From assembly GCF_031769215.1 (NCBI RefSeq), contig NW_026782111.1:310001-374000 (forward strand): a stretch of DNA of 64,000 nucleotides. The letters are read 5' to 3'. Positions 3,017 to 61,395 of the stretch are shown here, one piece after another. This stretch comes from Ylistrum balloti (taxonomy: Eukaryota). The stretch's first letter is position 1. The number at the start of each line of letters is the position of its first letter. The position numbers and the translations under genes are program-made. A model generated the notes under the pieces. The model did no database searches. It was not told the origin of the DNA and worked only from the letters and a program-made list of their open reading frames with translations.

Positions 3017-3065
3017 AACTGCACCATATAGCTGTTTCGTCCTTTCAGGACTCAGTGCTGCTGCA
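3017..3065 (-). mobile_element. Decayed solo hammerhead module of the dispersed HHR carrier family
   Basis: Reverse complement CAGCAGCA-CTGA-GTCC-TGAAA-GGAC-GAAACAGCTATATGGTGCAGTT; the core has lost CGA. Confidence 0.7.
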
Positions 3066-6000
3066 TTCCTATATTGTTCAAACCTACGAGTATAAAGAGG
3101 AAAATTGAATTGATTGGAAACTCATGTCAAAATCTAGGTGGAATATTGCACTATTCCTGTAATTCAATAAATTTCGTAATTTTCATTTATTGGATCATTT
3201 CATGAAAAAAAAACCCGTCATTTATACAAAATTGTGTATATTCTATACTATGTCACTGTTCGAATGAAACAAAACGTGGCATACTATGCAAGACAAGGTA
3301 TTACACAATAGACTGATTTTATGGTAGTCATAGATGTTACATATTTCTACCCCATAGGACAGAAATATCCACACTTCCAATGAGGGTAATATGTCTCTAT
3401 CTTGCCGAGGTAAGACAACCTGCACGCACAGTATAACGTACTTAGTCATGTGCTAAACCAGAAGTAGTTAATTTGAGACGTGAGAGACGTGACTGATTGA
3501 TGCTGACAGTTTAAAATAAGTTTTAATATCTTTTGTTAGACAGCATATGATCATTTTTGTTTATGAATTTTTTTTAATACAATACGGCAATGAATTATCA
3601 TTACGATTGTCTTTGTAATGATGTAGATTACAAATCGGCCAAAATAAAAACAAAGTCGTTATGTACCTGACTTTGTTTCCATATTTGTCAGCATATATTT
3701 GTCTTATTGTTCTGTTACCAGTATGTTGGAGATAATAGGTAGAAAAAAGACCAATCTCTTGTTTGAGGGTAGGACAGAGAAATCTTTACCCTCGGGAGAG
3801 ATTCCCGACGGTCGTGAATCTCCTCCTCAGGTACTGATTTCTCTGTCCTACCCTCAAACCAAGAACCATCTTATTTATATGACGTTGTTATTGAAACGTT
3901 GTACTTTGTTTGATTTAAATTGAGAGAAAAAAACCAACACAAACAAACAAATTATTCTCGATACAGTTGATATAACTGCTGATGTGCCAGTGGGATTTTA
4001 GAAGGAGAGGAAACGTACTACCATTGAGACCAAATGTTTAGGTTATCTTTATGTACTCATGAATAAATAATATATATATACAGAATGGACACTTATGATC
4101 AATGAATAAAACCTTTTATCCTGCATCTGGTGCTACCATTATCGGAATACAACTGCCACATATAGTTTTGCTGTATTCGGCAATGACGTAAAACAGCTGT
4201 TTTTTTAGCACGTGCGGTAATTCGACAAAATTACTTTCTGAATTTACTTAAATATCACATTTACGAATGTTACAACTGTTGAAATAAGTGATTTGATCTG
4301 TTGTAATAATCAAGTTTATTTACGAAAATCCATAAAGTCGCTTAGAGTTTGGAGCTATAGTTCCGCGCGGAGCAATTATTTTGACGTACTTCATCAGTCA
4401 AAATTCCACGTCAGGTAAACCAAGATTGAACTACAAAACTGTTTTGAGGTTTGATTGTCTGATTTTCAATTAATATACAAAAAAATAGAATACTTGGTCA
4501 GTGTTTTAAAAATATAAGCTGTAGAAAAACGAAAGTTCCATCCATTTTGAATTTGAATTAGATATCGTCAACATAGCGATAATTTTTCGTATGTTTTGTT
4601 GACGGTGAGCTCCAACCTCATTCGTGTTTGCTGATACAGGTTCAGTATTGCACCCAAGCGTCTGTGTTGACCGCCAGAAGTTTTCTTGTCAGGTCAACAT
4701 CAAACGTATATTGTACATCTCTTACAATCTCCCTGTACACGATATTGTGGCTATATCTGATACTTTCTCCGTTAATGCCTTAGAGTGGCCAGTTACTACT
4801 AATGTATTGTTGATCAAAATGACCATACTAATAAAAAAAAAACCTCATATGCATGAAGTAGGAACTACTAACAAGTAGAGAAACATGCTATTTTCATTAA
4901 ATGTTTTTTTTCAAAAAGTAAAGGACTTTTAAGGGATAAAACTATGATAAATTACTTAAATAATTTATTTTCCACGCGGCTCAAATTTCATGGTTTTACA
5001 AAACTTCATTATTTCATGGACATATGATTTCTTGTATCAGTATAGCTCTATCAATGTACTTATACTTATAATAACAGCTCGTGCATATATGAATTTGCGG
5101 ATTGGGGGTACCACCAAATCAACGAAAATAAATTCCCCGCTAATATTAATGACGTCACAGTATGATACCGTCATGATATGAGGGTAATTTCACCATTTTG
5201 TCCTTGTAGATATCCAGTAAGAAAAAAACATGATCAATTGTATCGTTTGTATTCGATAAAATTTTACATTGAAATTCCACATATCATGGATACGTGTATT
5301 ACATACTTAACATCGATGTGTCTGTACTTTTTCCTGTAATATATTTCATCTATGTATATAATATCGACATAACAGCATTTCCTTATATATCGTGACATAT
5401 CCTTATGACATTCCTAGTTTTTTATTAACTTTTTTTTATCACAAGTATTTTTATTTTAATGTTCCTTATTTCTTGAACAATAGCCCTTGCTGAATTTACT
5501 ACTCCCTACTTGTATCGTCAAATTCCCCTATAAAACCCACAAATCTTTTGAATACGATATTTATCACTAAGTTATATCTGATGCTTTCAGAATATGTTAC
5601 GATGGCTCTTCCGTATGGTTTTCAATGAGTTGACCACCAGATTCACAAGGAGACCTCGCCTCAAAATTACTCTGGCCGATGACAAGGAAAAAACAACAAG
5701 CAACCCAATTAAGGTTTTAAAAACCCTATATGTGTTATTGATACGGAATACTTCATCCGCAGATGTTTTAATAAAATATCTAAAACTTAATGAATCATGT
5801 CGACTGTACTTCAAACTTACAAATGTTAAAGGAGCCAAAATGAATTATAAAGTTGTCCAAATAGGAAAAATAAGAAGACAGACAGAAGAAGGAAAGTATA
5901 TAATGTATCCTAAAAGAAAATTTATAGAACATGAACATAACGAGCTGAAGAGACTGCTGCAGTTTTTAGGACGATTACCTAATGAGCCCAAGGGAAGCAT

Positions 6001-58617: not shown

Positions 58618-61334
58618 CTTGCTTAAAAAGGCAGGAAAGTGAATATCGCATATCTCTGGGTTTTTTTAATTTCAGAATTTGACACAAATACTGAAAGTGA
58701 AAAATACAGTCGTTTGGTGATAGGTTGATGCCTGGGTTCTGGGTGTAAGATCGTTTTATAAACGTTATTGCAAGGATTTGAAATTTCAAAAGTTTAAATC
58801 ATCGCAATAACAGATGTTATCTAAAAAAGGAAAGTCCTAAATATTTTAATAATAATAGCAATAAGGTTATTTAATATATATCTAAATATGACATTTCTTC
58901 ACACTATTCATATGAGCTTGTCCTGTGTTTGCTAATTTCATGTCATGTTTTTTGATGTTGTATTCACATTTTAGAAACATATATGTGTTTCCTCTTTCTA
59001 ATTAGAAAAATTTAACTCCTTGTCCTTAACAACAGAAACCCAGGTGACAAGTCACAGGTGTTGATTATAAGTTGATGAACTTGTGTATTTATTAAACAAC
59101 CTTGTGACCTTTTATGATAAATGGGAGTCCAATTTGACAGGTATGGTCAGGTATATTTGAAACTGATCCAGAGTTTACGAATATAATTGTATTTAGTTGT
59201 TTGTCGTGGATCACGTTAACGAGATCTACCTTTCTAAATGTGACAAGTTATTTATGCATAGGGATATCTAGCTTAACAATTCATATCTTGTAGAACACCA
59301 CGCCTATCATGGAACGAGATATTGCATACCATTAAAACTAATTTAATCTGAAACAGATCTATTTCAACCTCCTCCAACATATTTATGACCAAAGCTAACT
59401 ATTAACAATGTAATTTGACTTTAATTGCGTTACCAAATATTATATAAGCCTCAGAAGGCCAAACAGAAAAGGTAACTGACACTTACTCGCTCTATCTCTG
59501 ACCCGCGTGCATTCAATTTACAATGATTTAACTAATATGATTATTTCTAAAGATATTTCAAGTGATCTTTTGTATATCTGACACGAAATAGAATTTATGC
59601 AACTTGCATAGAAACTTATTTACGACTAATCCCTATAACGTTGTATTTTTCTGCTTTGTCACAGTGACCATGTGTGTGCCGTATGTTCGTTGCAGAGGTT
59701 TTTTCTGTTTTGAGATTGCAGAACAACCTATAATGGATGGCGTTATAATGAACGATGAAAACACTACAAAGTAGTCTAGGGTAAACTGTATGGATGTAAA
59801 ATGCACACTTTGTAACACAGAAACATATGTCAGTTGACTTAAAGGGAATCTCTTTCATTGATCTTCAACGCAATGAGTTTCTTTTTGTTCTTCTCCCAGT
59901 TTTAGATTTTGAATAATTTCTTAATCTGGTCACTTCCTGTTTTGCATTCGGATGTCATTCTATATGACCTTATCTGAGTCCTTTCGTCCTTGTCTTTGTC
60001 CTTCCCTCTTTAAACTTATCTAGTTCCATTTTTTGTCCACCGCTTTATCGGCATATTGTATGTGTAACTGTTTGGATGTCACGTTATTTTTTAAACGTCC
60101 ATCTCATAGTCTATGTTAGTCTTTCTATCACTCTTGGTCTCTAGTTTTAAGTTGACCTTTCTGTCTACATAACCTGACAATGTATGTTATATCCTTTCAA
60201 CGATCCATCCATCTTTTATTCATTCTGGCTATCTACATTTTCCATTAACTTCCTCTGTCTTTCAATTATCCCAAATATCACCCTCTGTTACTATCAACTT
60301 CCTCTGTCCATCTATCTGTCTGTCGTTCGGTCCAATTATCACCGTCTATTGCTATGAACTTACTTTGTCTATTTCAGCTTCCTCTGTCCTGCTATCTCTC
60401 TATCCCTTTACCCAATTATCACCCTCTATTGCTATCAAATTTCTTTGTCTATTTCAGCTTTCTCCGTCCTTATATCTGTCTATCCCTTAGCCCGATTATC
60501 ACCCGCGGTTTTAAGAGTCGTAGATACATCAGCTATAGGTATTTGACAGCCTGACAGGTACTAATCATCAGATTAATGGAAAATTCTACGATCAGAGATA
60601 CACTGATCTATCACTTTGTGTCACCTCTACCTAACTAGTATGGATCACCTTGGTGACCCGTATGTACATCATTCCATGCTTACCTAGTCAGTCTATATGA
60701 TAGCAACATCCATCAGGTGATATCATGTTTACCTACATGTAACGCTTACATGCATCAGCTGTATGCTTGCGATTCAGAAATATACGTGTTTCCAACGTTA
60801 CCCTTCCTTTATCATACATAACATTACAGACTGCTAGTTCGATATCTTGCCAATTTGACTGAATAACTTTAGATGATTTAAAATTGTAAGCATTCCTACC
60901 AAGTTAGCAACTTTTCTGAGCTATTTATGAGTAACTTTGAAATATCATGGAATTTTACAGCGGCCCAGTTTACACTTTTTTTTCATTATTATTGTTTGTT
61001 TGTTTGTTTTTAACCTTATAGTTAATTAATCTATCCTTATTATGTTGAGAAGTGTTCTATCAATACATGTTACAGTATATTTGGCTATTTGTGTAAACAA
61101 AAACACAATCTTTTTTATGTATGTATAACACTCCGTTATCGAAGTCTCTTTACACACCGTGAATGTGTTTGGGAAAGTTTGCATGAAACGTTTATTCTAA
61201 AATAATCACACTACTTGTAAATGCATTTCTTTCATACAAAAGGATTTCAAATCTTTATAATAGTAATAAATACATTATATTTATATTGCTGTTGTATTCC
61301 TTCATATAAATAAGATATTTAAAGATATATCCAA

Positions 61335-61395
61335 AATCCAAAGCGATCGAAAAGAAAGTCACAATTTAGACGGGGAGGCGCAGCAGCCATTATTG
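61335..61395 (-). mobile_element. 5' flank fragment of the HHR carrier family (no ribozyme)
   Basis: AAAGCGATCGAAAAGAAAGTCACAATTTAGACGGGGAGGCGCAGCAGCC aligns with 46982-47031 and 28600-28640. Confidence 0.5.

What the first reader, a model, noticed from the sequence alone, without database searches (positions are those of the whole stretch)
3017..61395. Dispersed ~200-250 bp non-autonomous element carrying the hammerhead; about a dozen copies in 64 kb
Seen: solo or partial modules at 3017, 17248, 17441, 25478, 28511, 30771, 31133, 44550, 46895 and 48196, and a flank-only copy at 61335. They share a 5' flank (...TCTAGATTTT...CGATCACTTT...CCTAGGCTTCAA..TTTAGACCCTT) and a 3' flank (CAGTTTAATTCATT...TGCTGTATCTGATTCTAAA...GAAAAGTG.CATTCACTTATGTGT), on both strands. 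The arrays carry diverged versions of these flanks. Every solo ribozyme is mutated; intact cores survive only in the arrays. Inference: an old, high-copy retrozyme-like or Penelope-pLTR-derived family whose ribozyme module is a hotspot for tandem amplification.
Basis: partly seen in the sequence, partly recalled or inferred. Interest (0 to 1): 0.7.

Follow-up and report, generated by a model that had tools for sequence, protein, structure and literature searches.

The report
Old hammerhead-carrying jumping repeat in scallop
The scattered copies are real: they are decayed remains of a roughly 395-letter non-coding jumping element that carries one self-cutting hammerhead RNA motif, a scallop member of the "retrozyme" family already described in mussels and other animals, so it is a sound but largely expected find.

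Summary
A profile built only from genomic copies outside the window finds 14 insertion loci in the 64 kb, on both strands (E 6e-58 to 2e-5).

The full unit is about 395-398 bp, 38.7% GC and has no ORF.

- Copies share a sharp 3' end, ...TTTTGTACAATCT(T), 89-92 nt after the hammerhead cut site.
- Their 5' ends vary.
- In my sample, nearly every copy that reached unit position 1 reads on into the end of another unit.

This pattern indicates target-primed reverse transcription from a multimeric or circular RNA. The hammerhead is the canonical metazoan type I form.

Together this fits the metazoan non-LTR retrozyme (mussel: 350-390 bp units; PMC7229834), which is thought to depend on Penelope-like elements. 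Intact RT+GIY-YIG Penelope-like elements exist in this genome. Those I examined have different hammerheads and no similarity to the unit, so no partner was identified.

The family is old (copies 79% alike) and abundant (at least 4,163 3' termini). All solo ribozymes in the window are mutated, but about a quarter of sampled genomic solos are not.

Both 45-bp arrays sit inside copies of the element and belong to a genome-wide satellite. RNA evidence was unavailable. Other first-reader notes from this scan describe similar hammerhead dimer relics elsewhere in this genome.

The parts
2981..3284 (-). 5'-truncated copy, profile positions 62-384. The hammerhead core is destroyed (CTGAnGA box lost).
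   Evidence: nhmmer E 2.3e-35; module sequence
11940..12517 (+). Element copy with its single hammerhead module replaced by 10 tandem 45-bp modules (11989-12438). The 5' flank matches profile about 227-270 and the 3' flank matches 316-395.
   Evidence: nhmmer hits 11940-12038 and 12395-12517; TRF; Rfam RF00163 34.8 bits at 12351-12394
17156..17575 (-). Copy in two pieces: 17458-17575 (profile 180-297) and 17156-17294 (profile 267-396, canonical 3' end). They are separated by 163 unrelated bases inside a duplicated hammerhead module.
   Evidence: nhmmer; alignment
25397..25670 (-). 5'-truncated copy, profile 185-397, with the canonical 3' end, plus a small upstream module fragment (25621-25670). 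The hammerhead core is mutated.
   Evidence: nhmmer E 1.2e-20
28498..28687 (-). Copy, profile 134-326, lacking the 3' tail. Helices II and III of the hammerhead are broken.
   Evidence: nhmmer E 1.9e-46. The locus is present in all three DNA runs laid on it.
30265..30400 (-). Degraded copy, profile 215-394.
   Evidence: nhmmer E 7.6e-07
30609..31245 (+). Head-to-tail partial dimer: unit 1 at profile 91-396 (30609-30882), about 17 bp of junction, then unit 2 at profile 8-388 (30900-31237). Both hammerheads are mutated.
   Evidence: nhmmer; sequence read directly
38351..39149 (+). Element copy holding 16 tandem 45-bp hammerhead modules (38366-39084) in a 90-bp alternating pattern. It has a short 5' flank (profile 255-270) and a 3' flank (316-372).
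   Evidence: nhmmer; TRF; monomer list
44525..44685 (+). 5'-truncated copy, profile 245-397, with the canonical 3' end. The hammerhead core is mutated.
   Evidence: nhmmer E 4.7e-23
46802..47047 (-). Best-preserved copy, profile 160-398, with the canonical 3' end. The hammerhead has G12 changed to A (GAAA to AAAA).
   Evidence: nhmmer E 6.4e-58; the genome search with it returned 2,713 first-look candidates
48148..48293 (+). Degraded copy, profile 222-356. The hammerhead is largely replaced.
   Evidence: nhmmer E 6.3e-07
50025..50119 (-). Tail-only copy, profile 310-396. It begins at the hammerhead cut site.
   Evidence: nhmmer E 1.9e-05
61333..61419 (-). Fragment of the 5' part only, profile 141-232, with no ribozyme.
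   Evidence: nhmmer E 1.8e-12; BLAST to 46976-47035

Best explanation
These are dead copies of an old, very abundant, non-coding retroelement of the metazoan 'non-LTR retrozyme' kind.

The source elements were head-to-tail repeats of a unit about 395 bp long, each unit carrying one canonical type I hammerhead.

Inferred life cycle:

- A multi-unit transcript is made and may be cut by the hammerheads. These have a 2-bp helix III with a palindromic loop, so they probably act as pairs.
- The cut RNA may be closed into a circle.
- A reverse transcriptase supplied in trans, most likely from a Penelope-like element, starts cDNA synthesis on nicked target DNA.
- It starts at one fixed internal site of the RNA, about 90 nt downstream of the hammerhead cut.
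- It copies backwards for a variable distance, sometimes past the unit boundary into the preceding unit.

This would produce copies with one common 3' end, scattered 5' ends and partial-dimer structures.

Shown here:

- the family, its unit and its fixed 3' end
- the variable 5' ends and the read-through junctions
- the hammerhead architecture
- the lack of coding capacity, the age and the abundance
- the presence of intact RT+GIY-YIG elements in the same genome

Inferred only:

- RNA self-cleavage and circles
- the identity of the reverse transcriptase
For: 1. The family is real and discrete. Genome searches with window:46780-47060 and with the full unit L028:1501-1895 returned 2,713 and 5,728 first-look candidates, with scored copies 76-83% identical. 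The 27-nt 3' terminus with up to 3 mismatches gave 4,163 hits against 0 for the reversed control.
2. The 3' end is sharp and common to copies...GTGTGTCTTTTGTACAATCT, then T in 70% and a second T in 52% of copies, then unrelated sequence.
3. The 5' ends differ in every copy.
4. In my sample, nearly every copy reaching unit position 1-3 is preceded by the 3' end of another unit, from 6 to more than 240 bp long, joined at the same junction ...ACAATCTT|TAAGATAGCAGG.
5. The hammerhead has a 6-bp helix I, a 4-5-bp helix II and a 2-bp helix III with the palindromic ACAGCUGU. Rfam RF00163 scores it at 34.8 bits. This is the 'canonical metazoan type I' form described in PMC4209133.
6. The unit is 38.7% GC and has no open frame over 78 aa even across a dimer.
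7. The cut-to-3'-end distance is 89-90 nt, plus 1-2 T. In the Anolis Poseidon Penelope-like element, reverse transcription starts 111-118 nt into the ORF and the hammerhead cut lies 26 nt into it, which is 85-92 nt after the cut (PMC11167929).
8. Intact 755-aa and 669-aa RT+GIY-YIG ORFs are present in the genome.
9. Mussel retrozymes have 350-390-bp units and about 5,000 hammerheads (PMC7229834). Vertebrate retrozymes are related to Penelope-like pLTRs (10.64898/2026.07.22.740005).
Against: - No autonomous partner was found. The unit profile hits none of the RT/GIY-YIG-bearing loci examined, apart from unrelated neighbouring insertions. The three hammerheads found in those elements are a different, long-helix-II minimal type.
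- No RNA data exist for this organism in the run index, so transcription, cleavage and circles are untested.
- Target-site duplications are not demonstrable. Matches of 6 nt occur in 16% of copies against 7% in shuffled pairs, and several of these are artefacts of tandem junctions.
- The unit does not fold into an unusually stable or rod-like structure (z = -1.1).
- Dispersed copies keep the hammerhead no better than the rest of the unit (0.896 against 0.884 column identity). The copies themselves are therefore under no constraint.
- Long arrays of three or more complete 395-bp units were not seen among the scored matches.
Confidence: 0.75

Rival explanations
1. The 395-bp unit is not a separate element. 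It is the pseudo-LTR (terminal repeat) of an autonomous Penelope-like element, and the dispersed copies are ordinary 5'-truncated insertions of that element.
For: Penelope-like insertions are typically 5'-truncated, form partial tandems and carry hammerheads in their pLTRs (PMC8557442, PMC11167929). The genome has at least 51 GIY-YIG matches, and I examined only about 17 of them.
Against: In about 25 copies that reach unit position 1, the upstream sequence is another unit's 3' end and never an ORF. The unit profile finds nothing in 5 loci with long RT/GIY-YIG frames or in 11 further GIY-YIG loci. The hammerheads found in three of the five RT/GIY-YIG loci have a 4-7-bp helix II with a 5' bulge and no similarity to the unit's hammerhead.
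Confidence: 0.1
2. It is a SINE-like element mobilised by a LINE and only happens to contain a hammerhead, as in the Schistosoma Sm-alpha type. Penelope-like enzymes are not involved.
For: A fixed 3' end with 5' truncation is common to all target-primed retroposition. The genome holds many LINEs, according to earlier notes from this scan.
Against: Rfam finds no tRNA-, 5S- or 7SL-like head at any copy, even at E up to 10. There is no poly(A) or microsatellite tail. Read-through into a preceding unit is the Penelope-like and retrozyme signature, not a SINE feature. The spacing from the cut to the 3' end equals that of a Penelope-like reverse-transcription start (PMC11167929).
Confidence: 0.1
3. 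The copies spread at the DNA level, as satellite fragments moved by recombination or extrachromosomal circles, and not by reverse transcription.
For: Parts of the unit do form satellites: the 45-bp hammerhead arrays and a 72-bp array of the 3' tail. The window is rich in other satellites.
Against: Random DNA breakage would not give one common 3' end within 2-3 nt alongside scattered 5' ends in thousands of copies.
Confidence: 0.05

Closest known systems
Metazoan non-LTR retrozymes (Cervera & de la Pena 2020, PMC7229834), especially the Mytilus galloprovincialis family
   Same: Both are bivalve families. Both have a canonical type I hammerhead, a non-coding AT-rich unit of about 350-400 bp, a head-to-tail arrangement, thousands of copies, and autonomous Penelope-like elements in the same genome.
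   Different: - Circular RNA was shown in mussel and is untested here.
- Here most copies are solo, 5'-truncated relics or partial dimers rather than long tandem arrays.
- Sequence homology to the mussel family was not tested, because no referenced sequence was available.
Pseudo-LTRs of Penelope-like elements, e.g. Poseidon of Anolis carolinensis (PMC11167929)
   Same: Both show partial tandems with a 5'-truncated upstream copy. Both have a hammerhead near the unit's 3' part. In both, the insertion's 3' end lies about 85-92 nt downstream of the hammerhead cut.
   Different: - No ORF lies between the repeats.
- The hammerhead is the canonical type, not the minimal long-helix-II type seen in this genome's own Penelope-like elements.
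- No 30-40-bp optional 'tail' variant was seen.
Hammerhead satellites of newts (satellite 2) and Schistosoma Sm-alpha
   Same: Both are repeats carrying type I hammerheads with a weak helix III, which are thought to act as dimers.
   Different: - Those units are about 330 bp (newt) or SINE-like with pol III boxes (Sm-alpha).
- This family has no pol III head.
- This family has spawned a 45-bp satellite made only of the ribozyme.

Membership tests
Metazoan non-LTR retrozyme | Type I hammerhead of the canonical metazoan form (helix I about 6 bp, helix II about 4 bp, helix III 1-2 bp with a palindromic loop) | tested here: met
   Rfam RF00163 at 34.8 bits. A strict descriptor finds 6/4-5/2-bp helices with ACAGCTGT in the arrays and in 13 genomic solo copies. 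The definition is from PMC4209133.
Metazoan non-LTR retrozyme | The hammerhead lies in head-to-tail repeats of about 170-400 bp | tested here: met
   The unit is 395-398 bp. Partial and full dimers are joined at a constant junction. Arrays of three or more full units were not seen among the scored matches.
Metazoan non-LTR retrozyme | Non-coding, low GC, no LTR/PBS/PPT | tested here: met
   GC is 38.7%. The longest stop-free frame across a dimer has a median of 53 aa and a maximum of 78 aa.
Metazoan non-LTR retrozyme | Transcribed and processed into unit-length circular RNA | not testable with these tools
   No RNA run holds the sequence; only DNA contig runs were found.
Metazoan non-LTR retrozyme | Target-site duplications flank insertions (when present) | tested here: inconclusive
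   Matches of 6 nt occur in 16% of 64 insertions against 7% in shuffled flank pairs. There are no longer matches.
Metazoan non-LTR retrozyme | Autonomous Penelope-like elements in the same genome | tested here: met
   There are 51 GIY-YIG matches. The 755-aa and 669-aa ORFs carry RVT_1 plus GIY-YIG.
Pseudo-LTR of an autonomous Penelope-like element | The repeat is contiguous with an RT-GIY-YIG ORF | tested here: not met
   Upstream of unit position 1 there is always another unit's end. The profile finds nothing in the RT/GIY-YIG loci examined. The test is not exhaustive.
Pseudo-LTR of an autonomous Penelope-like element | Partial tandem with a 5'-truncated upstream copy and a fixed internal reverse-transcription start | tested here: met
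   The 3' end lies 89-92 nt after the cut, against 85-92 nt in Poseidon (PMC11167929).
SINE | Head derived from tRNA, 5S or 7SL, and a LINE-type tail (poly-A or microsatellite) | tested here: not met
   Rfam gives no such match at any copy, even at E up to 10. The 3' end is followed directly by unrelated sequence.

The most novel reading that the evidence does not exclude
The spacing between the hammerhead cut site and the reverse-transcription start, about 90 nt, is the same in this scallop retrozyme and in a lizard Poseidon element. In addition, nearly every sampled copy that reaches the unit start wraps around into another unit.

If this is more than coincidence, 'hammerhead plus about 90-nt initiation module' would be the minimal, anciently conserved cis-signal that Penelope-like reverse transcriptases recognise. 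Retrozymes would then be that module circularised.

The 45-bp ribozyme-only satellite could be a further reduced derivative that spreads by riding inside such units.
Probability: 0.3. Interest if true: 0.6.

Novelty: new member of a known kind. Interest (0 to 1): 0.4.

Why it matters
- It gives a clean, well-bounded description of a hammerhead-bearing repeat family that probably accounts for a large share of the roughly 10^5 hammerhead-like sequences in this scallop genome (a rough count). That is useful for repeat annotation, where such short 3' ends are often left 'unknown'.
- The insertion anatomy has a fixed 3' end about 90 nt after the cut and wrap-around 5' ends. This is indirect genomic support, in a mollusc, for the recent proposal that animal retrozymes are mobilised by Penelope-like enzymes.
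- It points to a simple bench test: circular RNA in gonad, and cleavage of dimeric transcripts.
- It is not a new kind of system.

Tried and rejected
- **Rfam on Penelope-like loci.** An Rfam scan of five RT/GIY-YIG-bearing loci found no hammerhead. A relaxed core search then found minimal hammerheads of a different type, so they are not the source of this unit.
- **Apparent link to a GIY-YIG fragment.** An apparent link between the unit and a GIY-YIG fragment (L061/L073) turned out to be unrelated neighbouring insertions around an inverted duplication.
- **Whole-unit RNA fold.** It is not unusually stable (z = -1.1). RNAalifold on 24 copies recovered neither the hammerhead nor a rod-like fold. 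Pair counts show mostly decay, with only wobble changes.
- **Target-site duplication test.** Inconclusive.
- **Expression.** No RNA runs were available. The DNA contig runs only showed that the loci at 28400-31290 are present in three samples, with less than 1% difference.
- **Copy density.** Copy number is therefore given only as lower bounds.
- **First hammerhead descriptor.** My first script had a register error and printed nothing. It was corrected.
- **Pair-counting tool.** I did not use the structure-pair counting tool, because it needs a long typed dot-bracket string. Pairs were counted in a script instead.
- **Mussel comparison.** Not done, because it would have required typing published mussel retrozyme sequences.
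Full report
**Context**

The window is G000:C254:310001-374000 of a 648-Mb animal genome. Earlier notes from this scan call it a scallop. It is AT-rich (32-36% GC) and holds several unrelated satellites. Rfam finds type I hammerheads only in two 45-bp tandem arrays, at 11989-12438 and 38366-39084.

**Checking the observation**

Self-BLAST of the listed sites showed that each holds a hammerhead-like module. It also showed that similarity extends into the flanks for some pairs, for example 28498-28640 against 46882-47023 (78% over 143 bp) and 46976-47035 against 61333-61392.

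For a formal test I went outside the window. A genome search with window:46780-47060(-) gave 2,713 first-look candidates, with the 40 scored copies 76-81% identical over about 245 bp. I built an nhmmer profile from 25 full-length copies on other contigs. It finds 14 insertion loci in the window at E from 6e-58 to 2e-5.

**Anatomy**

Aligning 30 genomic copies with flanks showed a sharp common 3' end (...GTGTGTCTTTTGTACAATCT) and different 5' ends. At a constant junction (...ACAATCTT|TAAGATAGCAGG...) they run into the 3' part of another unit.

A genome search with one full unit (L028:1501-1895(-), 395 bp) returned 5,728 first-look candidates. It found many full-length matches, several with an adjacent partial or complete upstream unit. 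In my sample, nearly every copy reaching unit position 1-3 is preceded by 6 to more than 240 bp of another unit's end. The window's own example is the partial dimer at 30609-31237.

After ...ACAATCT the next base is T in 70% of copies and the one after is T in 52%. Beyond that the sequence is unrelated. The 3' end is therefore fixed within 2-3 nt.

Other properties of the unit and family:

- The 27-nt terminus with up to 3 mismatches occurs 4,163 times, against 0 for the reversed control.
- The unit is 38.7% GC and has no open frame longer than 78 aa, even across a dimer.
- Copies are 78.8% identical pairwise and 87.9% identical to the majority residue, so the family is old.
- The hammerhead columns are no better conserved than the rest (0.896 against 0.884). 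This is what one expects of dead copies decaying neutrally.

**The ribozyme**

Intact versions read GCAUCA-CUGACGA-GUCC(U)AGA(A)GGAC-GAAAC-AGCU-GUA|UGAUGC. That gives a 6-bp helix I, a 4-5-bp helix II and a 2-bp helix III inside the palindrome ACAGCUGU. This matches the 'canonical metazoan type I' hammerhead, whose weak palindromic helix III is thought to require two neighbouring copies to cut (PMC4209133).

In the window a strict descriptor passes only array units, 2 of 10 in array 1 and 5 of 16 in array 2. Each solo module has a disabling change. Genome-wide, about 13 of about 55 sampled solos pass the descriptor.

**Mechanism**

One 3' end, scattered 5' ends and read-through across the unit junction are what target-primed reverse transcription gives when it starts at one internal site of a multimeric or circular RNA and stops early.

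The start site lies 89-90 nt (plus 1-2 T) after the hammerhead cut. In the only Penelope-like element studied in vitro, reverse transcription starts internally 111-118 nt into the ORF, and the hammerhead cut is 26 nt into it. That puts the start 85-92 nt after the cut (PMC11167929). The agreement is suggestive, not proof.

The genome does hold intact RT+GIY-YIG ORFs of 755 and 669 aa. However, the unit profile matches none of the loci examined. Three of the five elements examined carry different hammerheads, with a 4-7-bp helix II and a 5' bulge. No partner is identified.

- Target-site duplications could not be shown.
- No RNA run was available, so cleavage and circular RNA remain inferred.
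- The unit RNA is not unusually structured.

**Comparison with known families**

Cervera & de la Pena (PMC7229834) described non-LTR retrozymes in animals. In the mussel these are 350-390-bp repeats with about 5,000 type I hammerheads, expressed as circular RNAs and coexisting with Penelope-like elements. A 2026 preprint (10.64898/2026.07.22.740005) argues that retrozymes derive from Penelope-like pLTRs.

The scallop family meets the sequence-level criteria: hammerhead type, unit size, head-to-tail arrangement, no coding capacity, low GC, and Penelope-like elements in the same genome. The RNA criterion could not be tested.

It fails the test for being simply a pLTR, because no ORF is contiguous with it. 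It also fails the test for a SINE, because it has no pol III head and no tail. I found no paper on this family in scallops. I file it as a new member of a known kind.

**Relation to the arrays**

Both arrays in the window lie inside element copies. Array 1 is flanked by profile positions about 227-270 and 316-395, and array 2 by 255-270 and 316-372. The same holds for arrays in L007 (16 units), L036 (3 units, inside the upstream unit of a partial dimer) and L053.

Yet array sequence from the window matches arrays on dozens of contigs at 88-92% identity, in register with a 90-bp two-unit pattern. These include more than 10 kb at C48:1206345-1216818. Arrays 1 and 2 also share the alternating ATCAC/ATTAC unit types. 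The array-bearing copies have tails of different subfamilies.

The arrays therefore look like one dispersed 45-bp satellite born from this element's ribozyme, rather than many independent local amplifications. How it spreads is open: it could ride in retroposed units, or recombine into resident copies. The summed contig depth at at least 85% likeness over the module is thousands of times single-copy depth. Rfam's loose first look counts about 10^5 hammerhead-like candidates. Both figures are rough.

**Verdict**

This is a real, ancient, high-copy retrozyme family. Novelty is modest. The conserved spacing from the cut site to the start site, and the wrap-around junctions, are the most useful new details.

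Noticed in passing
window 11989-12438 and 38366-39084; genome C48:1206345-1216818, C564:722408-728642, C30:884521-886071 and many others: The 45-bp ribozyme-only repeat is a genome-wide satellite. A search gave at least 1,249 first-look candidates. Arrays reach more than 10 kb and are 88-92% identical to window array 2, in register with a 90-bp two-unit pattern. This satellite is younger or more homogenised than the 395-bp dispersed copies, which are 79% identical.
   Followed up: partly
G000:C263:474148-475326 and 484524-484838: Exact copies of the element's 27-nt 3' terminus recur every 72 bp. The element's tail has therefore also given rise to a tandem array, present in both orientations about 10 kb apart.
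   Followed up: no
L076:2689(-), L078:4560(+), L077:2730(-): Minimal hammerhead cores lie 200-570 bp downstream of the RT+GIY-YIG ORFs of this genome's Penelope-like elements. Their helix II is 4-7 bp with a bulged base at its 5' end. They are of a different type from the retrozyme's hammerhead.
   Followed up: partly
G000:C422:240415-261997: GIY-YIG matches recur at about 5.36-kb intervals. Four of the five lie in 755-aa open frames and one in a 425-aa frame. The arrangement looks like a tandem array of young Penelope-like elements.
   Followed up: no
element tail, e.g. L032, L033, L037, L039 units (profile about 311-350): Just after the cut site, GAUGCAGU...ACUGUAUC can form an 8-bp hairpin that would tie up the 3' strand of helix I. 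Two copies carry changes that strengthen it (G.U to A-U, and G.U to G-C). It could be an alternative fold that switches the ribozyme off.
   Followed up: no
window copies at 17156, 25397, 30265, 30800, 31165, 44580, 39085; L007, L046: Most window copies belong to a second subfamily. It is marked by a 5-nt insertion and by ...TAAATTTG.ATTGAAA.GTG... in the tail, where the main genomic subfamily has ...TAAATTATGAAAAGGTG...
   Followed up: partly
window 57-827, 12919-13757, 33481-36964, 45576-46584, 60332-60504: Five unrelated tandem repeats lie in the window: 28/55 bp, an AACC-rich 26/56 bp repeat, 36/108 bp spanning 3.5 kb, 69 bp, and 80 bp. The window is a satellite-rich region.
   Followed up: no
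window 29564-29757: Another high-copy repeat lies here. Summed contig depth is 500-2,400 against about 15 for single-copy sequence. It is not related to the hammerhead element.
   Followed up: no
L073:4931-5287 and 7000-7358 (G000:C879): A 353-bp inverted duplication (95% identical) of a GIY-YIG fragment. Copies of the hammerhead element lie on either side of it.
   Followed up: partly
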